A DNA stretch of 64,000 bases from Okamejei kenojei (Eukaryota). Each line of letters opens with the position of its first letter. The stretch's first letter is position 1. The stretch is from positions 4,712,001 through 4,776,000 of the forward strand of contig CM069160.1 in NCBI GenBank assembly GCA_035221665.1. Direction: 5' to 3'. The notes below the pieces were generated by a model. The model saw only the letters and a list, made by a program, of their open reading frames with translations. It ran no database searches and had not been told where the DNA came from. Of the stretch, positions 1 through 45,653 are shown one piece after another. The translations under genes and the position numbers were made by a program.

Positions 1-114
1 CACCACTTACAATGTTCCCGGTTCGGTTATTCCCAGCGTTCCCGTGACCAGAGACACGTTCTCGATGCTGGGGGGTTCTCTCTGGTCATGACCTGTCTTG
101 TCATCTTGTTACAG

Positions 115-22139: not shown

Positions 22140-22180
22140 TTAGCAGTGCACGTTCTGGTTTGGTTGAATATTTTGATAAT
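22140..22180 (-). CDS. Predicted cytoplasmic-tail exon of the class I gene (DYQNIQPNQNVHC*)
   Basis: Strong acceptor atttccctcctcag in apparently non-repeat sequence 1.9 kb downstream of the TM exon. The phase-1 join gives GAT TAT CAA AAT ATT...TGC TAA. Confidence 0.7.
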
Positions 22181-25100
22181 CTGAGGAGGGAAATTATATA
22201 TTAGACAACTAACAAATGGCAGAGAACAGAACTCAGAAAGATGCAACTTGTTTATTCGCTTTAACTGTTGATCCATCCCACATAACATCTACCTTCCAGA
22301 TATAATGGTACAGGGCCAGACACCCAGGTTTGATCCTGACTACGGGTGATGTCTGTACGGAATTTGTACCTTCTCCCTGTGACTGCATAGGTTTTCTCCA
22401 GGTGCTCCAGTTTCCTCCCACATTCCAAAGACAGACGTGCAGGTATGTAGGTTATTGACTTGTGTCCCTAGATTATGTGGGTGATCGTTGGTTGGTGCGG
22501 ACTCAGTGGGCCGAAATGTCTGTTTCAATGCTCTCTCTCTAAACTAAACAAAAAACTCAATGCTCCTTCAAATAGTTTCGTCCACACAAGTTCTACGTTT
22601 CCAACTTTCGCTTCCTCACTAGGGTCAAATTACAGAGACCAATTAATCCATAAACCCTGGCATATTTGGTATGTGTGTGGAAACTGGAGTACAGTGGAAA
22701 CCCATGCGGTCATGGGGAAAACATGCAAACTTCACACAGCCGACAACCGAGGTTAGGATTGAACTGATGTCTCTGACGCTCTGAGGCAGCAGCTCTATCA
22801 GCTGCGCCACTCATGTTCAGCACAAACGTTGTTGGACGACGGACCTGTTCCTCTATTACAGGGGCATTCCCATGCACCGTAGAATTCAGCGACTCCGCAA
22901 CATTGGGTCACTGGAAGTATTCCCTGCCTGACGATCAGATCACATTGAAATGCCTCCAGATCAGTCGGACAGACACCAGTTAGGCAGCATCTGCCTGCAA
23001 ATGATTCATGTCCCTCCAACCCCTGCATCTCCATGCACCCAGGAAGGTGCACACCAAACGCCACCATCCCTGGCAGTGCTTCCCAGGCACACACCACATA
23101 GAGTGTAATAAAAACCTGCCCTTTTTTTAAAACTGCAGCTTCTACCCTGTACTGAATATAATGCAATAAGTTAAATGTCATAGTAGGCATTTAGTTAATT
23201 GGGATAATTTTAGTCAATTGGGAGGTGTGATTGCAAATCCTATACAATATCATAAACCAAGTAAAATGTGACAAAGTCAAAATGGCCCGGCACAAAGAAC
23301 AGAATATTCATGAACATCGATAACATGTCAAGGTACTGAATAAAACAGTTGGGATGTTCTGCTACAGTTGTACAAGATGTTGGTGCGGCCGCATATGGAG
23401 TATTGCGTTAAGTGTTGGTCACTCCACTATCGGAAGGATGTCATTAACAGGCCTGAGATTCAGGGAGAGGATGGGCACGCTTGGACTTTATTCTTTGGCA
23501 TCCAAGTGGCTGAGGGATGATCATATAGAGGTTTATAAAATCAAGGGGAACAGATAGATTGAATGCACGGAATCTTTTAACCAGCCTTGTGTAATCAAGA
23601 ACCAGAGGACTTAGGTTTAAGGTGAGAAGGAAACGAGTTATTCGGAACCATAGGAAGTGGAAATATGGAACATTCCAGGGGAAGGAGTCGAGGCAGGTAT
23701 TAAAAAAGCATTTAGAACACACTTGGACAGGTACAAGTATAGTTTAATTGACCACTGTAAATTGCCCTCAGTAGGTGGGTGACTGGATGAGAATGTGCAA
23801 TAAGATAGAATTCATGAGAACAGGTGGTTGGTGGTTCGCATGGACTCAGTGGGCCAAAGGGACTGCTTGTATGCTGTACCTTTCGATGATATCTCTAGGA
23901 TTTGGTGCAGTGAATCCATAATGCCTACCTATTTATGTGACTCTGAATTCACAATTTTCAAATATCTGATTATCAAAAACATTTAACAACAGCACAAAGG
24001 CTAGTTGACAGTGGTGACTGGCGAGGCATTTCAGGTGTAGCTGCTGCCTTACCCTACTTGAGATCAATCATTTCTTCAAGCCCAATACATCATTAGCAAC
24101 CGTGCATCACAGTGTTTCCATCTTACCTCTCCTCTTTTTTCTCCACCAAACAATTACTACCAAGACAATAGCCAGTAATATCAGCACACACACGGCAATA
24201 AGGCCTATGTGCCTGTCTTTCTTCCTATTTCCTTCTGAAAAATAAGAATGCATCATTTTTTACAAATCAATTGTTAAGCTGTGCATCTAAATAGATTGGC
24301 ACTGTCTGAAGACTTCAGGATGAAGAAGGGTCTCGACCCGAAATGCCACCTATTCCTTTTCTCCAGAGATGCTACCTGACCGCTGAGTTACTCCAGCATT
24401 TTGTGTCTATCTTTGGCGCTTTTCAAGGTATATAAATATGTTGTTTTGAATCATGGAGTTCTGCAGCATGGCAAAGGGACAATATCTGTTCTGTACAACT
24501 GTATGATCTATGGGACCATCACAGCCACAACTTAATTCAAGAAAGAAGGTGAATTGAAAGCAGAAAGCTTTAACCCTATATCACCGAACATCTGTTTTGG
24601 GGAAAATGCTGGATATTTAATATGCTGAACATTTAATGCTGAACATTTAATAATAACAAAATAATAAAGTGCATTAACAGGGCATTAATGGGAAAATTCT
24701 AGAAAGAAAGAGATGCAGATACTGATTTACACAAAAGCATTAGTTTAGTTTTTTGTCACGAGTATTGAGGTACAGTGGAAGGCTTTTGTTACGTGTTAAT
24801 CAGTCAGTGGAAAGAATATACATGATAGACACAAAATGCTGGAGTAACTCAGGCAACATCTCTGGCGAACATGTACTCAGTCAGAAGGATTGTGACCCGA
24901 AACATCAGCTATTTCTTTTCTCCAGAGATGCTGCCTGACCAGCTGAGTTATTCCAGCAATTTGTGTCCATCTATCTCCCTACACATGGACAGTTGACATT
25001 TCGTTTTGGGACCCTTCTTCAAACTTTGTTTGAGAAATTGATTAGAATTCTTTGAAAATGCAACAGGAACCCGCAGACAATGTATATTCGAGCAGCAGTA

Positions 25101-28100
25101 GTTTGCAGGTGTGCACAGCCTAAAATTCAAAAACAAAATGATGGAAAAGCAGAATAGGTAACAAAATTGGAATGAGAAACAAAATAAATACGATATATTT
25201 GCACGGGTTATTGATAGGGGACGATCAGCCATGATCACAATGAATGACGGTGCTGGCTCGAAGGGCAGAATGGCCTCCTCCTGCACCTATTTTCTATGTT
25301 TCTATGTTTCTAAAATGTAGAGGTCCAAGCGTCGTGAACAAATCAATGTTTTTTTAAGATAAACTGTTTCGGCACACTCGCGTTTAGTAAGGATTTGCGC
25401 AACGTTCCTGCCGTTGTAATCGGGCACACAAGAAGGGTCTCGACCCGAAACGTCGCCTATCTCCTTCGCTCCTTAGATGCTGCTGCACCCGCTGAGTTTC
25501 TCCAGCCTTTTGTGTACCCCCAGTTGACTGACGACTGACTCATCATCAACTCCTTCCAAAACCCTGTCACATGATAGTCCCAGGGTACACAAAAAGCTGG
25601 AGAAACTCAGCGGGTGCAGCAGCATCTAAGGAGCGAAGGAGATAGGCGACGTTTCGGGTCGAGACCCTTCTTCAGACTAATAATTAGCATGAATGGAAAA
25701 ACATGATAGTCCCAGCTCCCCTGACGAGGGTTCTAGCAATAAGTGGTCTGACCACCAGATGTCGCCAGAATATCTTGAGTTTCATAAGATATCTGATCAA
25801 GTGATGCAAAGGCACGTGGCTTATGACATTGGGGGTAATAATTAGCATGAATGGAAAAACAATTAAGAGCAAGCAGTGATTTGTCTTAAAGGAGTGTTCA
25901 GGTTGGGAAACGGCAACTGCAGGTTGGGAATCAATGCACGAAAGTGAACTACTTATCGTTGGCATTAAGAGCAGGTGAAGGGACTGATGGTGCTGTAGCC
26001 TAGATTGCTGATGATAGATAGATAGGTTGGAAATTAAGTTTCGGAGTATGTCAACAGTCTTCAGAGTGAAACATCAGATTCCTTAGTTGTGCATTGTTCG
26101 AGAGAATCTTCAAAAGTGAGCATTTGTGTAGGTTAGTGCAGCATACCTGGAATCAAATTGGTACGATCACTGTTTGTCAGGCAGTTATATTTTTCGTTGC
26201 AGAAGCTGTAACTTGCGTCACGGAACTTACTTCATTAGGTTTCGTTTTATTAATGTCAGATGTTTCAAGATACAGTGAAAAGGTTTTTTTTTTGCATGCT
26301 ATCCAAACAAATTAGATACTACACATAAATACAAATTCAAAAACAATAGATAGAGCAAAGAGGAGGATACAGAGTACAGAATATAGTTCTCAACATTGTA
26401 TCGCATCAGTTCCACAGACAATATTCAATGTGTTATGAGGTTGAGGTGAATCGGGCATTAAACATACATTCTGGAAGGACACTTCCGAAGCCTGATAACA
26501 GATGGAAAGGGGGTGTTCCTGAGTCAGGCAGTGCATATTTTTAACTTTCTGTACCTATTGCCTGATGGGAGCAGGAAGGAGGAATGACCGGGGTGGGATA
26601 AGGCTCGTTTTCCAAGGCAACCAGGTGTAGATTGAGTCAATAGTAGGAAGTCTGGCCTGTGTGATGATCTTTAACTCTGTGTATATTCTTGCAGTCTTGG
26701 GCAGTGCAGTTCCCAAATCAAGATGTGATGCAACTCACAACATGCTTTCTCAAGCGGCATCTGTAGATGTTTGCTGGAGTCACCAGAGACATGATGAATA
26801 TTCCCAGTCTCCTGAGGAAGTAGATGTGCCGGTGTGCCTCCTTGGCTATGTGGTCAGTCCATGACAGAATATTGGATGTATTCATGCCAAGGAACATGAA
26901 GCTCTCAATCATTTGCACTTCAGACCATTGATTCGGATTGGGGCATGTGCTCCCCCAGTGCCTTGCTGTTAATCACATCATGAGGAAAGATTATTTTTTT
27001 TATTTAAACGTACCTTTCATGGATTTCAGTTCCACCACTGAGAATCCCAAATACTCCTTCCTTGTATATCAGTTATTTATTTACTTTTGATAAATTTTCT
27101 GTTGACAAAGTCTTCTGCTCAAGTGGAGAGTGGGTGCTGATTATGTGATTGCTTAGAGCAACACCACTAAACAAATAAAGTTTAAGCATCTTGGAATATG
27201 GGATGTAGTCACAATGATTAAAATGGAAACAACAGAAGATAATGATTATCTACTAAATAATATTTAATGTTCTTACCCCAGATGATGGTCTTCCCACCGG
27301 GCAGGCTGCTGTGATCGACATGACAGGAATACTGTTTCCCATCATACGGATCATACTCAAGGACAGACGTTAGATGATATGTTCCATCGTTGTTGGGTAT
27401 GACCCCAGAAGATTTGGTCTCAGAGACATGTTGACCATTCTGCAACCAGCTGACATTGATAGCCGGTGGGTAAAATCCAAACACAGTGCAGTACAGGACT
27501 GAACGATCATCAGGGCGGGCAGTGAGAGTGACCTCAGGGGAAACTACAAGACAGTAAGTTGGTTATTTTCACCTTTAGTAAAACTTGCACAGTCACTCAC
27601 CACGAAATATTATTCAGTCTACTACAACCACCAAGTTACTGTCCACATCTGCCCCATTTTGCCTCTTTCATCACCATCAACCAACCACGTGGTTTAAAAG
27701 GGATCGCACGCTCCCTGTTAAGACAGTACACAAGAAAGTTTGAAAGCACGTACCATTAAATTCAGGAACACCTTCTTCCCCACTGTTATTGGACTACTGA
27801 ATGATTCTCATGTAAGATAAGGTGTTGCCCTGATCTTCCAACCAATCTCATTGTGATCCTTGCAACTCTTTTTGATCTGCACTTTCTCTGTAACTGTAAT
27901 GCTATGACATTGTAATTCTGCACTCTGAATATTGTTCTCTTTGCACTGTTCTACCTGTGGATGGCTTGATTGCACATGTGTAGTATGATATGATTGGATA
28001 ACACACAGACAAACTTTAGACTATATCTCAGTTCATGTGACAATAATAAACTAATTCCAACGGCAAATCTTTTCACTGCGGCACATTATTGATAATAATA

Positions 28101-31100
28101 AATAATTGACATGTTACAAAATGAGGGCCAATTGGGGAGGGGACAAGCTTAAAATTGGCAGTATTTTCACTCTTCTTCAATAAGAGATGAAAGGGACCAG
28201 TCATTGTTTACAAAATTCTGAAGAAGGGTCTCGACCCGAAACGTCGCCTATCTCCTTCACTCCTTAGATGCTGCTGCACCCGCTGAGTTTCTCCAGCCTT
28301 GTGTACCCCCCCATTGTTTATAAAATCTCTTTTTGCAGAGTTTGGTCATTCTCTGGCACTCTCAACCCCAGAGATTTGTGAAGACATAATCATTGGAAGT
28401 ATTTAATGTGGCGGGAGTTAAACTTTTGAAAGATTGGAGAATTGAGTGCAATGAGGAACTGGCACCGAACAGGAGTTGAGGCCCGAGGAACGTCAGCCAT
28501 GAACATATTGAATGGTGGGCAGGTTTCAGGATCAAATGGCTTACTCGGAAACTTGATAACCGAGGAGAAAATCAGGCTTCTGAATGATCGTTCCGTCAGC
28601 TAGGGTACTGTCCAATTGACCACTACTCCATTACAGACAGTGGACTTTGTTTATGGAACTATGTAGCAAGGAACTGTAGATGCTGGTTTAAACCGCAGAT
28701 ATACACAAAATGCTAGAGTAACTCAATGGGTCAGGCAGCATCTCTGGAGAGAAGGAATGTGTCACGTTTCGTGTTGAAACCCTTCTCTAATGGAACTGGT
28801 GTGCTACATTGCTGAGAACTATATGCTGCACTCTGTACCTTCCCCTTTACTCTACCTACAGTACCTGAGTTTGACTTGATCATATATATGTATGTTGTTG
28901 TCTCATCCAATTGGATAGCATGCAAAACAAAGCTTTACACTTTACCTCAGGACATGGGCAGCACAGTGGGGCAGCGGGAAAGTTGCTGCTTACAGTACCA
29001 CAGACCCAAGTTCAATCCTGACAATGGGTACTGTCTATATGGAGTTCATATATTCTCCCTGTAACCATGTGAGTAATCTCCGGGTGCTCCAGTTCAGTCA
29101 CATTCAAAGACGTGCAGGTTTGTAAGATTTTTGGCTTCTGTATATTGTCCCTAGTGTGTAGGATTGAACTAATGTTTGGGTGGTCGTTAGTCAGCACAGG
29201 TTCAGTGGGCCAAAAGGCCTATTTCCATGCTGTACCTCCAAACTAAACGTGACAATAATAAATCTAAACGTACCCCTGTGCCTATCTGTAGATTAGTGTC
29301 ACTCATACTGTGGCTCCGCCCACAGGCTTATCAGGGAGCTCTCTCTCTCTCTCTCGCTCTCTCTCTGGTAGACTCGCAGTAAGCATACTGAGAAGAAAGC
29401 ACCTTGTGTTTCCTCTGCAGAGTTACTAATAAAATAATATGGGTTCTAACCACTATGTGTGAATTTGATCATTCTTCCAACACTATCTCTTGTGTTGTTA
29501 TGTCTCTGGAACTAAGTGGCAGCTGCTCTTAACTGTTGTAGCATAACTGTTTATGTTGAACAATTCATGAAAAAAGTCTAAAAGGTTAAAAAAACAAATG
29601 ATTCCAGCATGTTGAAAGACAATTGAGACTGATACATAATGGGGTGGCACTGCGGTACAGTTCCAGTGACGAGGGTTCGATCACAATCTTGAAACAGAAA
29701 ATCTTAATCTGAGGCAGGCGCCTCTACTTCACCAATCCAGTGCTGTTATGACACTGCGCCTTAACATGAGAAAACGAGAAATTGGGTATTTCCTTGGGGT
29801 AAAAACAGACTTTTCAGAGACTTGGAAGCTGCAAGATAGTCCTGGAATGTGGTGGATCTCTGCGAGCTGTCCCAGAAGAGGACGTATTGTACTTATGTAC
29901 AGTATGACTTGACTGGAGAGAATGCAGAACAACCAGTTCACTATGGATAGACACAAAAAGCTGGAGTAACTCAGCATCTCTGGAGAGAAGGGATGGGGTG
30001 TCCAGCATCTGCTGTTCCATCCAAACCATTTCACTGCATCTCTGCATGCATGAAACTAAACAGAGTTATATAAAATGCAGCACATACTGCAATATTCATG
30101 TATGTCAGGCTGTTGTGATTTTGCAGGTGGATAACGTAACTAATTAAAAAAAAACACAAAAACGTGCAGGTGTAACTCAGTGGCTCAGGCAGCATCGGAA
30201 AGACATGGTTACGTAATGTTTCAGCTTTGGATCCTTCTTCATACTTCTTGCATCTGTTCTTTCTGACTTCAACTTAACTGTTGAAATGACCAGTTCCTTT
30301 ATCGACAGGGAATGCAACTCGTTGAATGTGGAATTGAGTTTGAAAGTTGCAACATGTCCAGGCAGAAGCTGAGTTGTTGGTCCTCAAGGTTACTTTCACC
30401 CTTGTTATCCTAGTGTAAGAGGTACAGATGGATGGATCATGGTTGGTGTTGAATGGAGAATTAAAGTGGCAGGAATCGTGAATCTTAGAAAGTCCCATGG
30501 ATTGAATGCGGGTTCTCCAGAAAGCAGCCATTCAATTTGTTTCATTGATGCAATGTGGAAGATTATGTCATAAAAACCAAATGCAGTAGATTTGACTGGA
30601 AGTGCAAGTGTTTCACATTGTTTCACATTGAAGAACTGCCTGGGTCTATGGACAGTGGAAGGGAAGAGGTAAATGGATAGATGTTGCATGCGCCAAGACA
30701 GGAAAGTAAAGGAAAGTTGTGGGGATAGTAGAGCAGACCAAGGAGCGAAACAAGGAATGACTATTTCAAAACATAGAATGGCGAGCAGAGCAGGAGGATG
30801 GGCGGAAGAAATGAATTGACTAATTGAATCAGATTTAAACTGGGAGGAAGTATTTACCATGGAAGTATTCTCCATGGAGGAGTGGAAAACGTATCCCTGC
30901 CCTGTCCAATGACCATAGAACAGTACAGCACCAGAACAGGATTTTCAGCCTGTAATGTCCATGTCGAACAGCAACACAGAAGCACAGTGAAAGAGTGGCT
31001 GTCTTACAGCATTAGAGACACGGGTTTGATCCTGACTAGAGTGCTGCCTGGACAGAGTGTGTACGTTCTCTCTGTCATCCTGTGGGTTTTCTCTGGGGGC

Positions 31101-34100
31101 TCCAGTTGCTTCCCAAATACAAAAGACATGCAGGTTAATTGGCTTTTGTAAATTGTCCCTAGCTTGTAGGACAGAAATAGTGAATGGGCAATTGCTGGTC
31201 AGTGCAGACTCAGTGGCCCACAGGTCCTGTTTCCATACTCTATCTCTAAACTAAATCAAAACTAATCTCCACTGCCTGCATGTGATCCATATCCGTGTAT
31301 TCGCTGCATATCCACGAGCCTGTCCAAAGCCTTCTTAAGCACCATTATCATGTCCTCCTCTACCACCACTCCTGGTAGCGCATTCTAGGTATCAAGCTCT
31401 CTCTGTGCAAAATAACACTTGACCTGCACATCTCGTGTAAATGTTGCCCTTTGAAGCTTAACGCTATGCTCTATAGAGATGTGTGATAGAGATGCAATCG
31501 TATTAGGGGCTGTCAAACGTGGTCAAGAAAATCCATGGTTAACTAATATGAAAGACATCAATTACACTTTCTCCCTGTCAAACAGGGATGTAATGCTGAG
31601 GTTCTATAAGGCACCGGTCAAGCCACATTTGGAGCATTGTGAGCAATTGTGGGCACCATATCTGAGGAAGGATGTGCTGGCTCTGGAGAGGGTCCAGAGG
31701 AGGTGTACAAGAATGATCCCAGGAATGAGTGGGTTAACATATGATGAGCATTTGATGGCAGTGGACCTGTACTCGCTGGATTTTAGAAGAATAAGGAGGG
31801 ACCTCATTGAACCATACCAAATAGTGAACGGCTTTGAGAGAGTGGATGTCTCCACTGGTGGGAGAGTCTACGACTGGAGGTAATTGTCTCAATATTAAAG
31901 GACATTCTTTTGGGAAAGAGATGAGGAGGAATATATTTTGTCAGAGGGTGGTGATCCTGTAGAATTATTTGCCACAGAAGGCTTTGGAATCCGTCAATGG
32001 ATATTTTTAAGGCATAGATGGATTCTTGATTAGTATGCAAGTCAGGGGTTATGGGGAGAAGGCAGGAGAATGGAGTTAGGAGGGAGAGATAGATCAGCCA
32101 TAATTGAATGGCGGAGTAGACTTGATGGGCCGAATGTTCTAATGCTGCACCCATCACTTATGACCTTATGACTCAGTTGGTTTCCTCCATGTGATCCAGT
32201 TTTGTTCCATATACCAAAAACGTGCCAGTGAGCTAGTCAGACATTGCAAATTATCCATAGTGGAACTGAGTGAACAGAGAATCCGAGGGAGCTGAGTGCA
32301 AGTTGTGAGAGAGAGTTGTGGAACAGTTCGTCGACATTGCATTGAAAACTAGCATAGACTCAATGGGCCGAATTACCTTTCCCTCTGTCATGATTGGGTC
32401 AGAGATAATATTACTCATTGCCTCAAAAACAGTGAAATATTACTAATTGCCTACCATCACAAAACAACATCCTTTGTTCTGAACTCACCTTCTCTGGTCA
32501 GGTATGTCTTTCCAATTGCGTAGTATGTATGCCATAGATCCACACAGTCATTTTCTAACAAGCTCTTGAAATAACGGTTCATTTTTTCATTCTTGTCCCA
32601 TTTCTCTTTGAAGGTCTCAGCTATTGGGTCATGCACCGTCCACTTTAGTTTGTCTTTATCAAAACTAAATGCATCTCTTCCATCAAAAGCCAACTTCAAT
32701 ATCCCTACATTGGGACTGTGATCGCTCACCTCACAACCAAACTGTCCTTGAACATAATGATAATCTGAAAGAAAAACAAAATCATTATTTGATTCATTGT
32801 TATGACTGGGGTCATTTCTGAACACCAGGGTCCAAGTCATTTATATATGTCGCAAGTAGCAAGGGTCACAGGACAGACCCCTGCAGAACTCTACTTGTCA
32901 CTGAACGACAGTCTGAATATTCGGCCTTCCATGCAACTGTAGAGACCATATTATTGTACGGGTGTGAGGCATGGACTCTCACTCCAGCACTGTCCAAGTC
33001 TCTCGATGGTACCTACATCCGAATGCTCAGAATAGTTCAAAATGTCAGTTGGAGGGACCACATCACCAACGCCCAGCTCTATGGGGAGACTCCACCTCTG
33101 ACCGAGAAGATCACGTTGAGCAGGATGAGGCTCGCAGGTCACTGGCTCCGCCACCAAGAAATGCCAGCAAACAAGGTTGTGCTGTGGGGACCCACCCATG
33201 GAAGACGAGACCTGGGTCGGCCAATCAAGATGATGCTGAAGATGTTTATGGAAGACCCACCTGTAGAGATAGAAGAGGAGCTTGCCAGCTGCATGGAAGA
33301 CAGAGATGTGTGTTGCTCCGTCATCGTGCCAGTCAAAAACCAGCATGGCACTAATGTTTTCGACGATTATTATTATTATTATCATCATCATCCACTACAC
33401 CCCTCTGTCCTGGGGATTTATCCACATTTCCCTTCAAGTGACCCAACATCTCCTTCTTGCTTAACTTCAAAGTGCCCCTGCATGTTAGCATTCTCCACAT
33501 TGATTCTCCATGTGTAAGAAAGAACTGCAGATGTTAAAATCGAAGGTAGACACTAAATGCTGGAGTAACTCAGCGGATCAGGCAGCTTCTCTCGATAGAA
33601 GGAATGGGCGTCGTTTTGGGTCGAGACCCTTCTTCAGACTGATGTCAGGGGAGGGACAAAGATAAGAGTGTAGGCGGAGACAGTAAGACTGGTGGGAGAA
33701 TTGGGAAGGGGGAGGGGACGGAGAGAGAAATCAAGGGCTATCGAAAGTTATAGAAGTCAATGTTCATACCGCTGGAGTGTAGACTGCCCAAGCGAAATAT
33801 GAGGTGCTGTTCCTCCAATTTGTGCTGGGCCTCACTCTGACAATGGAGGAGGCCCAGGACAGAAACATCAGATTGGAAATGGGAGGGGGAGTTGAAGTGC
33901 TGAGCCACTGGGAGATCAGGTAGGATAAGATGGACTGAGCGGAGGTGTTCAACAAAATGATCGCCGAGCCTGCGCTTGGTCTCGTCGATGTACAGAAGAT
34001 GACAACGGAAACAGCGGATACAGTAGATGAGGTTGGGGGAGGAGCAAGTGAACATCTGCCTCACCTGGAAAGGCTTTGGGTCCTTGGATGTAGTCGAGGG

Positions 34101-37100
34101 CGGACGTAAAGGAACGGTTGTTGCATCTCCTGCGGATGTAGGAGAAAGTGTCTGGGGAGGGGGTGGTTTGGGTGCGAAGGGACGAGTTGACCAGGGAGGT
34201 TCGGAGGGAACGATCTCTGCGGAAAGCAGAAAGTGGTGGAGATGGGAAGATGTGGCCAGTAGTCGGATCCTGTTGCAGGTGGCGAAAATGTTGGAGGATT
34301 ATATGCTGTACTTACTATTAAAAGTCCTTGCTTTTCTCCATGTCTTTCTTGGTGAAACCAAATGCAAAGTATGGGGGATGGAGGAAACTTTTTCTAATCT
34401 CTTACCTCGATGTAGATGACATTTTTTTTTCCGTATCTTATCTCCGTCCACACTGAAGCCTAACATCGAGGTGTTGGCGGCCTTTGCATTTTTTTAGTGT
34501 GACTGTATTGTAATCTGAATTTAATTGCACCTTAATTTGTACATGTGACAATAAGCTGACCTTGAGATATTGAAAAAGATGAGGGATTTTCTGTAATCTG
34601 ACTCGCCAAAGCCACTTTGTGGCCTCTTTTGGCCCCTTTAGTTTTAAGCTTTTGAGATACAGTGCAGAAACAGGCCCTTCAGCCCACACTAAGGACAATT
34701 TACATTTATTCTAAGCCGATTTACCTACATACCTGTACGTCTTTGGAGTGTGGGAGGAAACCGAAGATCTCGGAGAAAACCCACGTAGTCACGGGGAGAA
34801 CGTACAAACTCCTTACAGACAGCATCCGTAGTCAGGATGGACGGCGGGTCTCCAACGCTGCAGGTGCTGCAAGGCAGCAACTCTCTAGCTGTGCCACCCT
34901 CTAATCACACACTTGAGTTATTCCCTCCTTTCTTTACATTCCTCAAAGCTCCTGCCTGATTCCATCCTCCTGAACCTTACATGCACTTTCTTTTTTTTTC
35001 TTTCTAATTAAATTTAAAACCTTTTTGGTTATGCAAGCTTCCATTCCTTTGCCATTGCCATCCTTCCTCACACTGGAACTGGTGATTAAATAACTCATAC
35101 ATAAGTCATGGGAGTCACGGTAACAGGACATTGTAACAGGGCATCGTAACATATGCATGTCCATTCCACCTGTGCTTATAATGCAGAATACTTCCTACTT
35201 TCAATGGGATTTTCTGCCAATAATATAAACCACCTGATTGCCACATGCATGAAGTCAACACAATTTAAGAAAGACAAAAGAAAGACAAAAGAAAGACACC
35301 AGAAGCTGGAGTCACTCAGCATCTCAGGTGAAAAGGAATGTGACATTTTGGTGGCAGGTGTGATAGAGGTCGCAACCAGAAACATCACCTATTCCCTTTC
35401 TCCAGACTTGCTGCCTCACCCACTGACTCCAGCTTTTTGTGTTAATCTTCGGTTTCAATCAGCATCCGCAGTTCCTTCCTAAAATTAAGAAAGACACAAA
35501 ATGTTGGGGTAACTCAGCCGGTCAGGCAGCATCTCTGGATAGTGCACCGGCTACGATCTTTCGGTCCATCTGCTTGCCGTTTCCTAGGAAACTGTTCCTT
35601 ATTAACCTGTTCAGTGTCACCCCCGGGTATACTCAGGTCATGGCCAATTGTGAAATAAAAACGTGGCAGTCAACAGGTTAACAAGGTGTGGACAGAGTGT
35701 GGGGACTTCAGTGCAAGTCTTTGATCCAAGACCAGGTGAGAGGGAGGGGGGAGAGAGAGGTGGGAGAGAGAAGGGGGAGAGAGAGAAGAGGGGAGAGAGA
35801 AGGGGGAGATGGGAGTATGGGGTTCATTTTCCCCACACAAGCCATAGGGGACTGGGTAATCCGAACCCAAGCACCAAGTTGAAAGCGGCCGATGGTGCTC
35901 ATCCCTCGGTTCAGCCCCCACCCTCCGCATGCTGTGGAGCGGAGATGTGGGACAATGTTCATCCGTTCACAGTGATGTGATGGACTCCTCCTGGGTGGGC
36001 AACACCTGTATAGCAGGCTTTTTTGAGGGTTGTGCCCTCCCCCTGCACTGCTGCCTTTTTGGTGTCATCTCTAAAACACGTCTCCTCTGCAAAAAGCTCT
36101 CAGCTATGAATGAACATGCCTTGGTGTGAAAGAGGTGACATTCTGCTGTTTAAATTACCTTTTTTTCCACTGACCTTTCTTTCACCCCGGAGCACCCCGT
36201 AGTGGCGACTGCAGGGGGTTCGGGGCTCGGGGAGGCCCCGACCACGGGGGAACATTGTGGAACATCAGGGGAAGAGACTGACTTTGGTGCCTTCCCTCAC
36301 AGTGGGAAATTTTGATCCTGCTGTGGGGGATGTTTTATGTTGATTCCTATCTACTCCATGTTGTGTTCTTTATTTTAATGTATGGCTGTATGGTGATTTA
36401 ATTACGCTGTGCCAATTGGCACACGTGACAAATAAATGCATCTTATCTTATCTTATCACAAAATTCTAAAAGGACTGGACATGCTAGATGCAGGAAAAAT
36501 GTTCCCAATGTTGGGCGAGTCCAGAAGCAGGGGCCACACTCTTAGAATGCAGGGGAGGTCATTTAAGACCGAGGTGAGAAAAAAACCTTTTCATCTAGTG
36601 TTGTGAATTTATGGAATTCCCTGCCACAGAGGGCAGTGGAGGCCAATTCACTAGATGGATTTAAGAGAGAGTTAGATAGAGCTCTAGGGGCAAGTGGAGT
36701 CAAGGGATATGGGGAGAAGGCAGGCACGGGTTATTGATCAGCCATGATCACAATGAATGGCGGTGCTGGCTCGAAGGGCCGAATGGCCACCTCCTGCTCC
36801 TATTTTCTATGTTTCTTTGTTTATATTACTTCGACTACCTACGACTAGCATCACGACCGACTACAACCGGCTTCGACTAAACCTACGACTAAAAAAATAT
36901 TAGATTTTTCCCACGGCGACCTATTTTTAGTCGCGGTCAACTTTTAACATTTTGAAAAATACGCCACGACCTAGCTGAACCCTCGACTACGCGGAGACCA
37001 CTCTCGACCATGAAGGAGAGTGACAAAGACCTCCTACGACCTCGTGGCGACCTTGCCGGGACTATGGGCCGCGGGCAAACTTGCCAGAGGTCGCGGTGGA

Positions 37101-40100
37101 GGTCGCCTAAGTGGGGCAGGGGCTTTAGGTGAATCATTCCCTCTGGCATTGATAGGTGAATCAAAGGAGGGGGGGAGGAGGGGGTGTAGAAATTTGTAAG
37201 GATTTGCTGGTGAGTTTGCTTAAAAACTGCTCACTCCTTGAAATTAAGAGTCTGGGAACGTTAGCCCAGAGATAAAGAACAGCTTGTGAACTCAAGGTTA
37301 TAATTGATAAAAGCCTTGGCACAACTGTGAACAACAACCCTTTATTAGGACGAAGGTAATGAGCTAATGCCAACCAGCCCCCAGGAGCAATAAGGAAGGG
37401 ACAACACTTGGACGATGGTTTCATTCCAATAAGAAACACCATAAACATTGACAGCCAAATAAAAAGTAATGATGTTGTATAGATCAAGAGCCTTCTTTTC
37501 AAGCTGCTTTCTGCATTCTTTTAGTTGTTCTGCAGGTCTTTTAGTTTCTCTCGTTTTCGTGTTTTCAAGAAATACCACGAATAGCTGACTCTATACTAAT
37601 TATTGAAACTTTGAAAAATATGTGCAGGAGTAGGCCATTCGGCCCTTCACGCCAGCACCACCATTCAATATGATCATGGCTGATCATCTAAAATCAGGAC
37701 CCCGTTCCTGCTTTTTCCCCATATCCCTTGATTTCTTTAGCCTTAAGAGCTAAATCTAACTCCCTCTTGAAAGTACGTTGTTTAGATATGAGCCTTCTTT
37801 TCAAGCTTCTTTCTGAAGTCTTTTAGTTGTGTTTTACAGGTGCTTTAGTTTGTCTCGTCTTCTCTCTGCTGAATATGTAACATCTACAAGCTGTGAACAA
37901 CAAACATCCTTGAAAACCAACATGGGAGTGTGAGTACAAAGCACATTCTAACGTGACCCGACTTCAGTCTGAAGTAGGATCCTCACCCGAAATGTCACCT
38001 ATCCATGTTCTCCAGAGATGCTGCTTCACCTGCTGATTTCCTCCAGCACTTTGTGTTTTTTTGTATAAGCCAGCATCTGCACTTCCTTTTATCTACATTT
38101 TTTAAATAGTTCAATCCAGACAATTCGTTCAATTTTACACTTGTGACTAAAATGAGAAGGCAATTCAAGGGTAAATAACTGTCCATAATTCCAAGTGTCA
38201 TGAGAAAGAGGCCTTTCAGCCTCCTGAGCCCACTTTAGCCCAGAGAACAACACTAATTTTGCCCAAAACGGATCTTCCTCATTTCTATCAATGCCACAAA
38301 TGCACCTTTACGAAGAGAAATTTGCAGCGGTGGATTAATCTACTAAATCAGCACATTTTTGGTATGTGGGAGGAAACTGGAGAACAAACATTGTCACAGG
38401 GAGAATGCTTAAACCCCTGTCCCACTTACCTGTCCTTGACACGCTAATTACGCCACCTCCTGGTCACGTTGAGGCGCGACGGTCCCGCGAAGGTCGCCTG
38501 CGACTTCATGCGCCTGCACAGCCGTCTGGAGCACGTGACGTCATTTGAAGATGGACACAAAATGCTGGAGTAACTCAGCGAGACCGGCAGCATCTCTGGG
38601 GAGAAGCAATGGGTGATGTTTCGGGTCGAGACCCTTCTTCAGTCTGAAAGAAGGGTCTTGACCCAAAACGTCATCCATTCCTTCTATCCAGAGATGCTGC
38701 CGGTCCTGCCGAGTTACTCCAGCATTTTGTGTCTATCTTCAATTTTCTTGGCCCCGCTCTGGGAGTAGAAGTGGGAGCGGATCCGGACCGTAACGGCCGG
38801 TGAACCCCAGGCCGAGCTCGGCGATCGTTTGCCTCCTTCTGCTGCTGCTGGAGGTGAGACGTTGCGTCGCGCCAGGGTCTTGGGCCTGTCCCACTTTGGC
38901 CGTCAGTTACGCGACAGGCCGGTGGCGCGCGAAGATTTCGTTCGCTACAAACTTTTGGAGCGCTGCACGATACCGCGCACAACGACATACCCCTCCGCGC
39001 CTCTCAATGGGACCGGCCCCGCGCGGCCACTGGATGCCCGTGTGCCTCAACGCGACGACGAGGTCGCGTAATCTGCATGCCAAGGACACGTAAGTGGGAC
39101 AGGCCCTTTATACTCCCCACAGACTGCACTGGAGATGATTGAACCCGGATCACTGGAGCTGTGAGGCAGCAAGGCTCTTTGCTATAAAGCAGTCATAGAG
39201 AGAGTCACGCAGCATGGAAACAAGCCCTTTGGCTCAACATGTTCATGCTAATCTAGATACCCCATCTAAGCTAGTCCCATTTACCCTGCAATGGGTATAT
39301 ACTGTATCACTCAAAACCTTTCCCATGCATGTCCCTGTCCAAGTGTCTTTTAAATATTGTTATTGTACCTGCCTCAGCTCCATTCTCTGGCAGCTCATTC
39401 CATATACTTAACACTCTCTGAGCACAAAGATTGCGTCCCAGGTTCCAATCAAATCTTCCCTCTCTCACACTAAACCCATGTCCTCTGGCATTTTATTCCC
39501 CTTCTCTGGGTAAAAGGCTCCGCGCATACACTCTATCAATTCCCCTCATGATTTTAAGCACCCCTATAAGATCACCCCTTAGCCTACTGTGCTCCATGGA
39601 ATAAAGCCCTAGCTTGCCCAAACTCTCTCTCTTGTTCACAATCTTGAGGCCCAGCAATTTGCTCATAAATCTCAGAAACATAACAATGTTGCAGATAATA
39701 TGCGCACCATGATTAATGCAAATAAAACATCTTATTTTTGAAGGCAATATGATTCAATAAACATGGTTCAATGAATCTGACGATAATCCAATAAATGTCT
39801 TATTCACATTAATTCACATGTAATTTGAAAATAATAATAAATATTGCAAGGTATGGAAAATTGATAGAAATTATGCCCAGTGCATATTTTGATGTATCGT
39901 ACACACCTTACCCTGTCCAGAGTCAAACATTAAATATAATTTGTTTAATGTGTAACCAAAGAGGTAACAAAAAGCAATGTCTTAAAAAGTAATTAATCAT
40001 GAAACATGAATAGATGAATATGTGTTCATAATGAATACCCAAGGTATGCAAAGAGTCTTCTATCCAGAGATGCTGCCTGTCCCGCTGAGTTACTCCAGCA

Positions 40101-40673
40101 TTTTGTGTCTGTGCTGTAAACCAGCATCTGCAGTTCAATCCTACACATCTACAGTATGTTATCCACATTCTCACCCAACGAGCACAACGAGAACAATTTA
40201 CAGAGCCCAATTAACCTACAAACTTGCACATTTACACGATATAGGACAAAACTGGAGCACCTGGAGGAAATATGTGTGGTCACAGGGAGAACGTGTAAAC
40301 TTGCTCGAGGTCAGGATCTAACCTGGATCTCTGGCACAGCGAGGTATTTCTGAGAGATTTTTTTATTAACATTGATCACAATCCAAATTTATTCAAATGA
40401 ATGAACTAACTTGTTGTTTCGTTATGCCTCCGCATCCACTCGTCGACTTGCCCTTTGATGATTCCATGGAAACCATTTTCGGAAACCGTATTTGTTACCC
40501 AGTATCTCCTGTCAAATGCAGCCGCCATCCATTTCTGTCTTGGAACTGTAATGGCCATGTTTTTGTCATAATACTGTATCTCACAACCGTCCAGAACACC
40601 CACCACACTATATTCTGGTAGATGAGTACTCCCGTGGTTCAGGGTGTAGTAATAGATCAGTGTGTGTGAGGCC
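22140..40673 (-). CDS. MHC class I-like heavy-chain gene, nonclassical-looking; leader exon not securely located
   Basis: Five exons with GT-AG boundaries, joined in phase 1 from alpha1 onward: 40673-40411, 32764-32489, 27543-27277, 24234-24127, 22180-22140. Domain order is alpha1-alpha2-alpha3(C1-Ig)-TM-cytoplasmic. Confidence 0.92.
23340..23735 (+). mobile_element. Degenerate CR1 fragment (intronic)
   Basis: LVRPHMEYCV...LGLYSL...TRGLRFKV remnants in mixed frames. Confidence 0.75.
24127..24234 (-). CDS. MHC class I connecting peptide / transmembrane exon
   Basis: 108 nt, phase 1-1. EGNRKKDRH-IGLIAVCVLILLAIVLVVIVWW-RKKRR. Boundaries tttttcag / gtaaga. Confidence 0.88.
26460..26920 (-). mobile_element. 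Rex1/L2-type LINE fragment (intronic)
   Basis: ESFMFLG...LSWTDHI.K.AHRHIYFLRRL...NIYRC...SCIT in ORF 26718..26918. Confidence 0.7.
27277..27543 (-). CDS. MHC class I alpha3 (C1-set Ig) exon
   Basis: 267 nt, phase 1-1. VSPEV...LYCTVFGFYPPAINVSW...PNNDGTYH...YSCHVDHSSL...IW. Boundaries cttgtag / gtaag. Confidence 0.95.
28955..29248 (+). mobile_element. tRNA-derived SINE (HE1-like)
   Basis: ggcagcacagtggggcagcgg (A box), gttcaatcc (B box), LINE-derived 3' tail ending ctaaa. Confidence 0.75.
31580..32172 (+). mobile_element. CR1 fragment (intronic)
   Basis: [36 protein letters not shown] in ORF 31479..31883, plus the CR1 3' UTR. Confidence 0.85.
32489..32764 (-). CDS. MHC class I alpha2 exon
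   Basis: 276 nt, phase 1-1. HYVQGQFGCE...AFDGRD...KEKW...ENDCVDLW..Y with the C101-C164 pair. Boundaries ctttcag / gtgagt. Confidence 0.93.
32925..33390 (+). mobile_element. RTE-clade LINE 3' fragment
   Basis: LYGCEAWTLT...RMLR...VSWRDHITN..LY...RMRLAGH..RH...GRP followed by a (TAT/CAT)n tail. Confidence 0.8.
33511..34310 (-). mobile_element. Penelope-like element 3' part: GIY-YIG endonuclease and pseudo-LTR
   Basis: ORF 33738..34064 FTCSSPNLIYCIRC.RC.LLYI(G>D)ETKRRL.D.F.EH...VAQHFN, followed by the CTGAAGAAGGGTCTCGACCC repeat. Confidence 0.88.
34645..34900 (-). mobile_element. tRNA-derived SINE (HE1-like)
   Basis: Reverse complement of the SINE body (tcctgactacggatgctgtctgt...ctcccacactccaaagacgtacagg). 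Confidence 0.78.
36458..36820 (+). mobile_element. CR1 3' fragment
   Basis: KILKGLD.LDAGKMFPML...WNSLPQRAVEA plus the 3' UTR and tttctatg tail. Confidence 0.82.
38545..38742. repeat. Near-perfect ~200-bp palindrome made of two inverted Penelope pseudo-LTR ends
   Basis: ttgaagatggacacaaaatgctggagtaactc...cttcttcag|tctgaaagaaggg...gagttactccagcattttgtgtctatcttcaa. Confidence 0.85.
38882..39107. mobile_element. MITE with GGGCCTGTCCCACTT TIRs (PIF/Harbinger-like)
   Basis: gggcctgtcccactt ... aagtgggacaggccc. Related ends occur near 37110, 38415, 46194-46438, 56670 and 56940. Confidence 0.7.
40411..40673 (-). CDS. MHC class I alpha1 exon
   Basis: ASHTLIYYYT...LPEYSVVGVLDG..IQYYD...VPRQKWM...YW...RRHNETT, with the conserved N86 glycosylation site. 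Acceptor tgtctag, donor gttagt. Length 263 nt, so entry is in phase 2. Confidence 0.9.
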
Positions 40674-41029
40674 CTAGACACAAATAAAAGAATACAATTA
40701 TTGTCAAGCAATAGAAATTTCTATGGATAGGAAAGGTTTGGAGGGAAATCGGCAAAACACCAATTGGACTTAATTTGCACTACACATGATAGCCTTTATC
40801 CTGTATCTATATATTGTGAACGGCTTCATTGTAATGTAGTCTTTTCACTGACTGGATAGCAAACACGAAACATTTTCACGTGACATTAATAATAAATTAA
40901 ATTAAGCTAAAATATAGGTAGGTGGGTCAAGGGTAGATGGGGCATCTTGGCCGGCATAGATAAGGTGGGCTGAAGGGCCTGTTTCTATGCTGTATATGAT
41001 TTTAAATGTCAAGCTAACTTAGGTTATTT

Positions 41030-41313
41030 TAGTTTAGCTTAGACATACAGTGTGGAAACAGGCCCTTCAGCACGAGTCCACACATTAACACTATCCTACA
41101 CACGAAGGAGAATTTACATTTATACCAAGCCAATTAACCTACAAACCTGTACGTCTTTGGAGTGTGGGAGGAAAGTGAAGATCTTGGAGAAAACCCACAC
41201 TGGTCATGAGGAGAATGTACAAACTCCCTACAGACAGCACCCATAGTCAGGATCGGACCTGGGGCACTGGCACTTTAAGGCAGCAACTCTATCACAGCCC
41301 CACTGTGCCGCCC
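41030..41313 (-). mobile_element. tRNA-derived SINE (HE1-like)
   Basis: Full SINE on the minus strand from gggcggcacagtgg to the ctaaa tail. Confidence 0.78.
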
Positions 41314-42758
41314 TTACTGATCAACATTTGGAAATAATATGATATTCAGATGTTCCACCCACAAATGTAAGTCACGGCAGTTATTTGGTTCACAGGCCAC
41401 CATACATTACTCCATGTGTCGTTAAATAGTAAAATCTAGGGGTAGGTATTGGAAATATCAGGAAGATAAAAAGAGATCAGGAACCAAAAAGGTTAGCATG
41501 GACTTGATGGGTCAAAGGGCTTGTTTCTGTGCTGCACTCTCTATGCTGCACGCCCAATTAGTTGCATCACATCATATTTATGTCGTAACCTTCAGTTGAT
41601 TAGTCTAACAGGGGTTCATTCACTCGTGTGTCAGACGACATGTAGCTCGCTGTTGGCTCCTGTCATCGTCCAACACGTTGACAGAATTGGTCGCCCGAAG
41701 CGTCACAGAGTGCATCGTGTCGTCGGTTCCAGGGATCGCCACGAGGAGGCTTCTGTCATGATCCCCCACAAAAAGGGTGACGGTGGAACAGCGGTAGAGT
41801 TACTGCCTTACAGCACAAGAGACCGCCAGGTTCAATCCTGACCACGGGTGCTGTCTGTGTGGAGTTTTTACGTTCGACCTGTGGGTTTTCCCTGGGTGCT
41901 CCAGTTTCCTCCCACACTCCAAAGACGAGTTTGTAGTTTAATAGGCTTTGGTAAAGATTATAAATTGTTGCTAGTCTATAGGATATTGCTACCGTATGGG
42001 GATCGCTGTTCAGCGTGGTCTTGGTGGGCTGAAATGCCAGTTCCCATGCTGTATCTCTATATCATTTTGAGCTGCAATATACAATAAGTTGCCCACATTG
42101 GATTGCATCATGGCAGTACATCAAGAGCAGGCTCTAAAATTATCAATGTAACATTTAACTTCTGCTTTGATATGACCTCCTGGTGACTTTTGTGATAGTT
42201 CACCACATTCTCCTTTGTCAGGGAGTTCCCCCATCATCTCACTGGTGAGGCAGGCCCCACATTCACACTCCCTCAAATACCACACATTTCCTGCTCGACT
42301 AGTTATTCAACCGTTTACTCTCACAGTCTGCCCTGTGAATGTGCAGAAATTAACATCACCAAAAAAAATCAGGATTGAACAACTCATTATCAACCTTAGA
42401 CACTAAGTGCTAAAGTAACTCAGCAAGACCGCAGCATCTCTGGAGAAAAAGACTGGATGGCACTTCGTGTCAGGACCCTACTTCAGTCTCATGCAGGGTT
42501 AGTCTGAAGAAGGGCCCCAAACCCGAAGCATCAGTCTGAGGAAGGGTCCCAACCTGAAGCTTCACCCAGCATCACCCATCCTTTTCTCTACAGAGATTCT
42601 GTCTGACCCATTGAGTTACTCCAGCATTTTGTGACACACTTTGGTACAAACCAGCATCTGCAGTTCGTTATTTCTACATCATTATCTATCTCTTTGAGAA
42701 AGCATTCCCATAGAATTTGCATCCTAACAAAATAAGATCACACAAAGTTACCAATAAG

Positions 42759-43070
42759 GACGACACAGTAGCACAGCGGTAGAGTTGACAGTGTTTGCAG
42801 TGCCAGATGCCCGGTTTCAATCCTGACTATGGGTGCTGTCTGTACGGAGTTAGTACGTTCTCCCCGTGACCTGCGTGGATTTTCGCCGAGATCTTCGATT
42901 TCCTCCCACACTCCAAAGACGTGCAGGACTGTAGGTTAACTGGCTTGATGCATGTGTAAAATTGTCCCTCGTTTGCATAGAATAGTGTTAGTGTGCGGGT
43001 TAGTCGCTGGCCGGTACAGACTCGGTGGGCCGAAAGGCCTGCTTCCACGCTGTATAGCTAAACAACAAAA
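42759..43070 (+). mobile_element. tRNA-derived SINE (HE1-like); further copies near 22300, 22620, 30980, 40190, 41778, 56265 and 61245
   Basis: gacgacacagtagcacagcggtagag (A box), ggtttcaatcctgactatgggtgctgtctgtacggag, tail gggccgaaaggcctg...ctaaa. Confidence 0.8.
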
Positions 43071-45153: not shown

Positions 45154-45653
45154 NNNNNNNNNNNNNNNNNNNNNNNNNNNNNNNNNNNNNNNNNNNNNNN
45201 NNNNNNNNNNNNNNNNNNNNNNNNNNNNNNNNNNNNNNNNNNNNNNNNNNNNNNNNNNNNNNNNNNNNNNNNNNNNNNNNNNNNNNNNNNNNNNNNNNNN
45301 NNNNNNNNNNNNNNNNNNNNNNNNNNNNNNNNNNNNNNNNNNNNNNNNNNNNNNNNNNNNNNNNNNNNNNNNNNNNNNNNNNNNNNNNNNNNNNNNNNNN
45401 NNNNNNNNNNNNNNNNNNNNNNNNNNNNNNNNNNNNNNNNNNNNNNNNNNNNNNNNNNNNNNNNNNNNNNNNNNNNNNNNNNNNNNNNNNNNNNNNNNNN
45501 NNNNNNNNNNNNNNNNNNNNNNNNNNNNNNNNNNNNNNNNNNNNNNNNNNNNNNNNNNNNNNNNNNNNNNNNNNNNNNNNNNNNNNNNNNNNNNNNNNNN
45601 NNNNNNNNNNNNNNNNNNNNNNNNNNNNNNNNNNNNNNNNNNNNNNNNNNNNN
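45154..45653. other. Assembly gap (exactly 500 N; true size unknown)
   Basis: Run of N. The round length suggests a scaffolding placeholder. Confidence 0.98.

What the first reader, a model, noticed from the sequence alone, without database searches (positions are those of the whole stretch)
22140..40673. Nonclassical MHC class I gene with a hydrophobic groove and CD1b-like sorting tail: candidate lipid or hydrophobic-ligand presenter in a cartilaginous fish
Seen: the spliced protein has class I architecture. By manual alignment to HLA numbering (approximate), the peptide-end anchors Y7, Y59, R84, K146, W147 and Y171 are kept, but T143>F, Y159>L, W167>L and Y123>A are lost. Many groove-facing positions are hydrophobic (F70, I73, I74, W81, V95, F99, L114, L116, F143, M152, F156, L159, L167). 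The predicted tail is WW-RKKRRDYQNIQPNQNVHC*. Known: loss of these anchors marks nonclassical class I, and CD1 molecules combine hydrophobic grooves with YxxPhi tails. Inference: this molecule may traffic through endosomes and carry lipid, lipopeptide or hydrophobic peptide cargo. I cannot assign it to a named chondrichthyan lineage (UAA/UBA/UCA/UDA/UEA or others) without a search.
Basis: partly seen in the sequence, partly recalled or inferred. Interest (0 to 1): 0.85.

Follow-up and report, generated by a model that had tools for sequence, protein, structure and literature searches.

The report
Skate copy of shark UGA gene

Summary

Each extracellular exon is 61-70% identical (from the printed alignments) to PDB 9CH4, titled "shark nonclassical MHC class I, UGA" (released 2026-03-18). 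Each is 87-94% identical to skate proteins. In trees, all three exons sit inside the skate branch of a clade that spans sharks and rays. A 2025 review calls UFA and UGA CD1-like and lipid-binding, citing a personal communication.

Added here:
- The YxxPhi tail is conserved across UGA and absent from its sister lineage.
- Skates carry many near-identical copies: at least 9 distinct annotated proteins in Rhinoraja, and first-reader notes list more class I genes near this window.
- This copy has no detectable leader exon.
- It carries a 2-bp CA excess at 40668-40660. In the orthologs' frame this reads G-P-H-T-H-stop.

It may be a pseudogene or an assembly error. 

The parts
40411..40673 (-). alpha1 exon (263 nt); in-frame reference window:40412-40672:-
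   Evidence: Read. PDB best hit 9ch4_A, E 3.6e-37. 87-94% identical to skate orthologs. Sits in the skate subclade, SH-aLRT 98.
40657..40673 (-). 5' defect: the exon starts GG CCT CAC ACA CAC TGA. The run (CA)4C at 40668-40660 is 2 nt longer than the orthologs' G-P-H-T-L-I reading needs. This puts a stop at 40659-40657 in the phase-1 frame.
   Evidence: Sequence. Orthologs read ALAGPHTLIYYY. tblastn finds GPHT at 40674-40663 in the other frame. The first two residues differ from all six aligned skate proteins.
32489..32764 (-). alpha2 exon (276 nt) with the C101-C164 pair
   Evidence: Pfam MHC_I E 5.7e-15. 9ch4_A E 2.6e-34.
27277..27543 (-). alpha3 exon (267 nt), Ig C1-set
   Evidence: Pfam C1-set E 1.6e-20. 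9ch4_A E 3.5e-33.
27218..27276 (-). Open frame that continues past the alpha3 donor (GKNIKYYLVDNHYLLLFPF*). If the intron were retained, the product would lack the TM segment.
   Evidence: ORF 27218-27484. The Leucoraja model P0157 ends ...GKNVKYSFIDNHYLLLFPF.
24127..24234 (-). connecting peptide, transmembrane segment and basic stop-transfer (…VIVWWRKKRR)
   Evidence: 86-94% identical to the five skate models that carry the TM exon.
22140..22180 (-). cytoplasmic tail exon DYQNIQPNQNVHC*; the YQNI codons are at 22178-22167
   Evidence: The tail is conserved in skates, rays and sawfish, and sharks end in YN[VIAT][VI].
45154..45653 (.). assembly gap (500 N) upstream of alpha1; it could hide the leader exon

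Best explanation
The gene is a skate paralogue of UGA, a nonclassical MHC class I lineage found in sharks and rays.

Shown here: it has the class I alpha1-alpha2-alpha3-TM-tail architecture. It groups with the UGA crystal-structure protein and with UGA-type genes of 20 shark and ray species in the tree. It keeps 125 of the 127 residues that are at least 90% conserved in that lineage.

Inferred from the family: the product would pair with beta2-microglobulin. Its groove is lined by conserved F70, I73, I74, W81, F99, L114, L116, F143, M152, F156, L159 and L167, with glycines at 69, 76 and 97, and would hold a lipid or other hydrophobic ligand. The cytoplasmic YQNI (YxxPhi) would bind adaptor complexes, so that the molecule recycles through endosomes and samples ligands there, as CD1b, CD1c and CD1d do.

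For this copy: it is one of several tandem copies in a skate genome. As assembled it lacks a leader exon. It also has a 2-bp CA excess that puts a stop five codons into the mature protein in the ancestral frame. I lean about 55:45 to a defective copy or null allele rather than an assembly error.
For: - PDB hits for each exon.
- 9CH4 is titled UGA and is about 88% identical (printed alignment) to the zebra shark member P0172.
- The protein search finds only three 50%-identity clusters near alpha1, then a drop to 46% identity and below.
- 17 named orthologues in sharks, rays and skates.
- In the tree, the UGA clade of 24 rows has SH-aLRT 99. It mirrors the shark/batoid split and is separate from the other shark class I clades.
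- Each window exon sits inside the skate subclade.
- Conserved residues are kept.
- The tail motif is conserved in UGA and absent from the sister lineage.
- CD1B/C/D motifs are YQNI/YQDI/YQGV.
- Literature on UFA/UGA lipid binding.
- Multicopy state in Rhinoraja. First-reader notes list three further class I genes near this window.
- Frame defect.
Against: - Lipid binding is not shown here and is cited only as a personal communication in a review.
- Six of the residues that hold peptide ends in classical class I are kept.
- Mean hydropathy of 42 groove positions is 0.63-1.01 for UGA. One classical-type shark sequence scores 0.32 and one CD1b-like sequence 1.67, so the groove is intermediate.
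- The predicted ortholog fold matches chicken CD1-1, H-2Kd, HFE and ZAG equally well, at Z 24.5-25.
- All other exons and splice sites are intact, which would fit a working gene with a local assembly error.
Confidence: 0.75

Rival explanations
1. The copy is intact and expressed. On this view the extra CA is an assembly error in a short dinucleotide run, and the leader exon lies in or beyond the 500-N gap.
For: - Five exons are open, with consensus splice sites, and 125 of 127 lineage-conserved residues are kept.
- DNA runs of the same organism hold only 0.91 of the sampled words of 40390-40720. That fits one local difference between the reads and the assembly.
- A gap sits 4.5 kb upstream.
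Against: - The 0.91 share cannot be placed on the CA run.
- Skate arrays contain models with missing or aberrant 5' ends: P0179 starts inside alpha1 and P0182 has a foreign N-terminus. Defective copies are therefore plausible.
- No alternative acceptor restores the frame (my reading of the sequence).
Confidence: 0.4
2. UGA molecules, this one included, present peptides or lipopeptides rather than free lipids. They would use the retained Y7, Y59, R84, K146, W147 and Y171 to hold a peptide end.
For: - These six positions are conserved across most of the lineage.
- Pfam scores MHC_I at 74-83 bits, and the CD1-type model MHC_I_3 stays below its cut-off.
- Groove hydropathy is intermediate.
Against: - T143, Y159, W167 and Y123 are replaced by F/L, L, L and A/I throughout the lineage.
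- The review reports lipids by mass spectrometry.
- Gly97, Gly69 and Gly76 are conserved, which suggests a remodelled groove (my inference).
Confidence: 0.15
3. It is a true orthologue of tetrapod CD1, not a convergent CD1-like class I lineage.
For: - Functional likeness: YxxPhi tail and hydrophobic groove.
- The sister lineage gives a weak hit to a primate CD1b-like protein, E 5e-12.
- Chicken CD1-1 is the top non-UGA structural match, Z 25.0, though tied with others.
Against: - The CD1-type Pfam model is below threshold.
- The single CD1 sequence in the tree sits on a very long branch outside all shark clades.
- The authors themselves call orthology hard to assess.
Confidence: 0.1
4. It is the classical, polymorphic class I gene (UAA) of this species.
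Against: - The orthologue model P0154 is only 32% identical to nurse shark UAA (6LUP) in the Foldseek alignment, and 6LUP scores E 1e-9 to 1e-10 against the alpha1/alpha2 exons.
- Four of the ten anchor positions tabulated are lost.
- It lies in a different clade from the UAA-type sequences P0223, P0261 and P0267.
Confidence: 0.01

Closest known systems
Shark UGA (PDB 9CH4, 'Crystal structure of shark nonclassical MHC CLASS I, UGA', released 2026-03-18)
   Same: - Domain order is the same.
- By count of the printed alignments, identity is about 70% in alpha1 and alpha2 and 61% in alpha3.
- The conserved hydrophobic groove residues are the same.
- The window gene falls in the same clade.
- Its shark relatives also end in a YxxPhi tail.
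   Different: - The window gene is from a skate.
- It has a longer tail: DYQNI plus eight residues ending in Cys, against the sharks' C-terminal YN[VIAT][VI].
- It belongs to a multicopy array, whereas the review calls UGA 'single- or low-copy'.
- It carries a 5' frame defect.
Skate RefSeq models: Amblyraja radiata XP_032898133.1, Leucoraja erinacea XP_055521885.1, Rhinoraja longicauda XP_078272153.1 and paralogues
   Same: - 87-94% identity per extracellular exon.
- The exon structure is implied to be the same.
- The tail RK[KN]R[RK]DYQ[NT]I[QP]PN.. is shared.
- GPR139-like genes are neighbours in both.
   Different: - Those models have a leader (M..LLSFF.VQ.ALA) and read G-P-H-T-L at the alpha1 start.
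- The window reads out of frame there, and no leader was found.
Human CD1b, CD1c and CD1d
   Same: - A short basic tail with a tyrosine motif; YQNI is identical to CD1B.
- A groove rich in hydrophobic residues.
- UGA is reported to bind lipid.
- A beta2m-type alpha3 domain.
   Different: - The sequence fits the classical MHC_I profile, not the CD1 profile.
- It keeps six peptide-end residues.
- Hydropathy is intermediate.
- Per the literature, UGA is MHC-linked in elasmobranchs.
- Orthology is unresolved.
Shark UFA (PDB 8GM8, released 2024-11-27)
   Same: It is the other elasmobranch lineage described as CD1-like, and it is also a nonclassical class I fold.
   Different: - UFA is a distant lineage: 29% identity and Z 21.7 to the ortholog model.
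- For alpha1, E is 1.6e-9, no closer than classical UAA.
- It is not the sister lineage found here. That lineage's best PDB hit is 9CH4, and 8GM8 is not within E 1e-40.
Unnamed sister lineage, labelled 'MR1-like' by NCBI (e.g. Leucoraja XP_055486430.1, Pristis, Stegostoma)
   Same: - It shares motifs: VPRQ.WMA, AGFHG..KG, MN.YFK.LLE.DC.
- It lies on the same chromosomes.
- It joins UGA with SH-aLRT 89.
- Its groove positions are even more hydrophobic, with mean hydropathy 1.35-1.48.
   Different: - Identity is 39-47% per extracellular exon.
- Position 59 is H and position 7 is F.
- It has long Q-rich tails with no tyrosine motif.

Membership tests
Elasmobranch UGA lineage | Closest solved or known sequence is UGA in all extracellular domains | tested here: met
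   9ch4_A is the top hit for the alpha1, alpha2 and alpha3 exons, at E 3.6e-37, 2.6e-34 and 3.5e-33. The next alpha1/alpha2 hits are at 1e-9 to 1e-13. The title is given.
Elasmobranch UGA lineage | Falls inside the clade that holds the UGA structure's close relatives | tested here: met
   The clade of 24 sequences has SH-aLRT 99. Each window exon sits inside the skate subclade at 98/99, and alpha2 within the batoid clade at 96. Trees used the quick method and single-domain alignments. No joined window protein was used.
Elasmobranch UGA lineage | Keeps the residues conserved across the lineage | tested here: met
   125 of 127 columns that are at least 90% conserved are kept. The exceptions are Y118D and K179E in mature numbering.
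Elasmobranch UGA lineage | Binds lipid ligands | not testable with these tools
   Only a literature statement is available (PMC12562908, personal communication). No coordinates or ligand data were on hand.
Elasmobranch UGA lineage | Complete open reading frame from the leader to the stop | tested here: not met
   No leader exon was found. The 2-bp excess gives a stop at 40659-40657 in the orthologs' frame. This bears on whether the copy is functional, not on lineage membership.
CD1 family | Sequence fits the CD1-type profile (Pfam MHC_I_3, PF16497) above its cut-off | tested here: not met
   The alpha2 exon scores 20 bits against a cut-off of 35. Amblyraja P0154 gives no hit, and zebra shark UGA P0172 scores 29.8 bits.
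CD1 family | Tyrosine-based YxxPhi sorting motif in a short tail | tested here: met
   YQNI at 22178-22167. It is conserved across UGA. CD1B has YQNI. Sorting itself was not tested.
CD1 family | Deep, almost wholly hydrophobic groove | tested here: inconclusive
   22-25 of 42 groove positions are hydrophobic, with mean hydropathy 0.63-1.01. The CD1b-like sequence scores 1.67 and the classical-type sequence 0.32.
Classical class I (UAA) | Full set of invariant peptide-end residues (Y7, Y59, R/Y84, T143, K146, W147, Y159, Y171) | tested here: not met
   Position 143 is F and position 159 is L; 167 is also L and 123 is A. The UAA-type sequence P0223 has the full set.
Classical class I (UAA) | High allelic polymorphism centred on the groove | not testable with these tools
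   No population data were available. Seven full-length Rhinoraja paralogues compared differ at 28 sites, and only 3 of these are groove positions.

The most novel reading that the evidence does not exclude
In skates, UGA has grown from a single or low-copy gene into a tandem family interleaved with GPR139-like genes: at least nine distinct annotated proteins in Rhinoraja, and possibly several genes within about 1 Mb here. UGA and its tail-less sister lineage may divide the work the way CD1 isoforms do. UGA would survey endosomes through its YxxPhi tail, and the sister lineage would stay on the secretory or surface route. If so, a two-compartment lipid-presentation system predates the shark-ray split.
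Probability: 0.25. Interest if true: 0.55.

Novelty: new member of a known kind. Interest (0 to 1): 0.35.

Why it matters
It shows that a reader working from raw sequence alone arrived at the same idea that structural work reached for UGA. That idea is an MHC-linked, CD1-like lipid presenter in the oldest jawed vertebrates.

For the field, the modest additions are these:
- The tyrosine sorting tail is a conserved, lineage-specific feature of UGA from sharks to skates.
- A sister lineage lacks that tail.
- Skates hold many near-identical copies, some of them apparently defective.

These points bear on how early endosomal lipid sampling arose, and on how copy number should be read in skate MHC assemblies.

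Tried and rejected
- **Leader exon.** A scan for Met plus a hydrophobic core plus a GT donor over 40674-47200, and a tblastn with four orthologue leaders, found nothing credible. A weak match at 46693-46646 has no start codon.
- **Alternative acceptors.** None near 40673 restores a phase-1 frame (my reading).
- **Read evidence.** The look-up of sequencing runs listed DNA holders of the same organism at a 0.91 share of words, and no clear RNA holder.
- **Lineage names.** The supplements of PMC10751288 label the genes only 'MHC-Ib'. Searches for 9CH4, UFA/UGA and nurse shark CD1 found no primary paper.
- **Groove hydrophobicity.** A simple hydrophobic fraction did not separate UGA from the other shark clade. 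Mean hydropathy separated it only moderately.
- **Fold ranking.** It did not tell CD1 from classical class I.
- **TAP2-like pieces at 47148-52519.** They show a Walker-A-like GPSGGGED and a signature-like SAGQKQR, but none of the five segments gave a Pfam hit at E 0.1 or better. I could not confirm a TAP2 gene.
- **My first guess that the sister lineage is UFA.** Rejected: 8GM8 (UFA) is not among that lineage's PDB hits at E 1e-40.
- **Joined model.** The joined spliced protein was not built, searched or folded. The Amblyraja database protein stood in for it.
Full report
**What is there.** The finding lies on the minus strand. Reading the sequence gives five exons with AG/GT borders:
- alpha1, 40673-40411
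- alpha2, 32764-32489
- alpha3, 27543-27277
- connecting peptide, TM segment and basic anchor, 24234-24127
- an 11-codon tail exon, 22180-22140

The four junctions between these exons are phase 1. The tail reads RKKRR-DYQNIQPNQNVHC*. A tblastn of the exons against the window finds no second class I gene. Pfam finds MHC_I in the alpha2 exon and C1-set in the alpha3 exon; alpha1 alone gives no hit. My mapping to HLA numbering uses the HLA-A2 sequence from memory and is approximate.

**What it is.** Each extracellular exon has the same best solved relative, 9ch4_A, at E 3.6e-37, 2.6e-34 and 3.5e-33. For the alpha1 and alpha2 exons, classical class I (including nurse shark 6LUP), MR1 and ZAG follow at 1e-9 to 1e-13; for alpha3 the next hits are beta2m-fusion and antibody chains that carry extra Ig domains.
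- An exhaustive search with alpha1 found only three 50%-identity clusters close to it, at 86, 65 and 64% identity. Identity then dropped to 46% and below.
- These clusters are 'class I F10 alpha chain-like' models of little skate, thorny skate and a sawshark.
- A search with the thorny skate protein listed orthologues in skates, sawfish, manta, stingrays and seven shark genera.
- I folded that skate protein, which is 90-92% identical to the window's extracellular exons, with an alignment of 69 sequences; mean pLDDT was 84.
- Foldseek and VIA-align both return 9CH4 first (TM 0.96; Z 30.0, rmsd 1.4 Å). They give its title as 'Crystal structure of shark nonclassical MHC CLASS I, UGA', released 2026-03-18.
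- 9CH4 is about 88% identical (printed alignment) to the zebra shark member.

In a tree of alpha1-alpha3, the UGA clade of 24 sequences has SH-aLRT 99 and mirrors the shark/batoid split. Each window exon, placed separately, sits inside the skate subclade or the batoid clade at 96-99. The window keeps 125 of the 127 lineage-conserved residues.

**What is known about UGA.** The 2023 MBE paper on the elasmobranch MHC mentions an unpublished CD1-like lineage, UFA, in the class Ib cluster. [quoted passage not shown] It adds that crystal structures and mass spectrometry suggest lipids like those bound by human CD1d, citing a personal communication. PDB 8GM8 is UFA. It is as far from the window gene as classical UAA is. 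I found no primary paper in the library. It is not new.

**How it most likely works.** Shown here:
- the architecture and the lineage;
- conservation of the hydrophobic groove positions F70, I/L73, I74, W81, F99, L114, L/F116, M152, F156, L159, L160 and L167, and of glycines at 69, 76 and 97, across 24 sequences;
- loss of T143, Y159, W167 and Y123 throughout the lineage, with Y7, Y59, K146, W147 and Y171 kept.

Mean hydropathy of 42 groove positions is 0.63-1.01 in UGA and 1.35-1.48 in its sister lineage. It is 0.32 in one classical-type shark sequence and 1.67 in one CD1b-like sequence. The groove is therefore enriched in hydrophobic residues but intermediate.

The tail motif is the strongest new point. 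Batoids have [DA]-Y-[QE]-[NST]-I plus eight residues ending in Cys. Sharks end in Y-N-[VIAT]-[VI]. The whale shark has YSLT, and a few models are truncated. The sister lineage has long Q-rich tails without any tyrosine motif. Human CD1B, CD1C and CD1D carry YQNI, YQDI and YQGV.

Inferred, not shown: pairing with beta2m, lipid cargo, and adaptor-dependent recycling through endosomes.

**The 5' end.** Skate orthologues read ...ALA-G-P-H-T-L-I-Y-Y-Y. In the window, the bases after the acceptor are GG CCT CAC ACA CAC TGA. This encodes G-P-H-T in the phase-1 frame expected of class I genes. It then has one CA unit too many, (CA)4C at 40668-40660, and meets a stop at 40659-40657.
- No alternative acceptor repairs this.
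- No leader exon was found up to 47200.
- A 500-N gap lies at 45154-45653.
- Rhinoraja models include one that starts inside alpha1 and one with a foreign N-terminus, so defective copies may occur in skate arrays.

Against decay, every other exon is open and conserved. Five DNA runs of the same organism, from two studies, hold only 0.91 of the sampled words around the exon, and a sixth run holds 0.75. This could reflect a difference at this very site, but it cannot be placed there. The question stays open; I lean slightly towards a defective copy.

**Context.**
- Rhinoraja longicauda has ten distinct annotated proteins of this type on one chromosome. The seven full-length ones compared are 95.5-99% identical, and their differences are not centred on the groove.
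- First-reader notes on this genome list similar class I genes 47 kb before, 88 kb after and 855 kb before this window. These notes are unchecked.
- GPR139-like sequence lies at 108-995 and 7105-7353 on the plus strand. In little skate, a GPR139-like gene is fused to the UGA-type gene in read-through models.
- The TAP2-like pieces noted by another reader at 47148-52519 look degenerate, with GPSGGGED in place of a Walker A lysine. None of the five segments gave a Pfam hit.

**Verdict.** This is a new skate member of a known kind, possibly a broken one. Interest is low to moderate.

Noticed in passing
window 27218-27276 (minus strand): The frame stays open past the alpha3 donor (GKNIKYYLVDNHYLLLFPF*). 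A Leucoraja RefSeq model (P0157) ends in nearly the same peptide. An intron-retaining isoform without a TM segment may therefore be shared among skates, or the intron may simply be conserved.
   Followed up: partly
window 47148-47561, 49993-50525 (plus strand): TAP2-like remnants: GEVTALVGPSGGGED (Walker A with the Lys-Ser/Thr replaced by Glu-Asp), ..SAGQKQR.., and a frame-shifted ..TRPTSSLD... None of the five segments gave a Pfam hit at E 0.1 or better. It looks like a decayed fragment, not a working TAP2.
   Followed up: partly
window 108-995 and 7105-7353 (plus strand): GPR139-like receptor sequence. The first stretch is 41% identical over 301 aa, and the second is a 58%-identical C-terminal fragment. 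Both matches are to the GPR139 part of a little skate read-through model that fuses a UGA-type gene with GPR139. The pairing of the two gene types seems conserved in skates.
   Followed up: partly
proteins P0008, P0205-P0215 (not in the window): This is a sister lineage of UGA, present in sharks and rays and labelled 'MR1-like' by NCBI. It has F7 and H59, a more hydrophobic groove and no tyrosine tail. It is not UFA: 8GM8 is absent from its PDB hits at E 1e-40. I could not find a name for it.
   Followed up: partly
proteins P0164, P0178-P0186 (Rhinoraja longicauda, one 41.5-Mb chromosome): Ten distinct UGA-type proteins are annotated, and the seven full-length ones compared are 95.5-99% identical. 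This is at odds with the 'single- or low-copy' wording in the review. It could be a real expansion, or partly assembly duplication.
   Followed up: partly
window 31479-31883, 53215-53937, 57398-58414: Reverse-transcriptase-like ORFs of a repeated retroelement lie in the class I introns and flanks; for example, ...FADDTKL... occurs in the 338-aa ORF at 57398-58414. These are ordinary repeats.
   Followed up: no
No letters of this stretch were sent to any public search afterwards.
   Followed up: no
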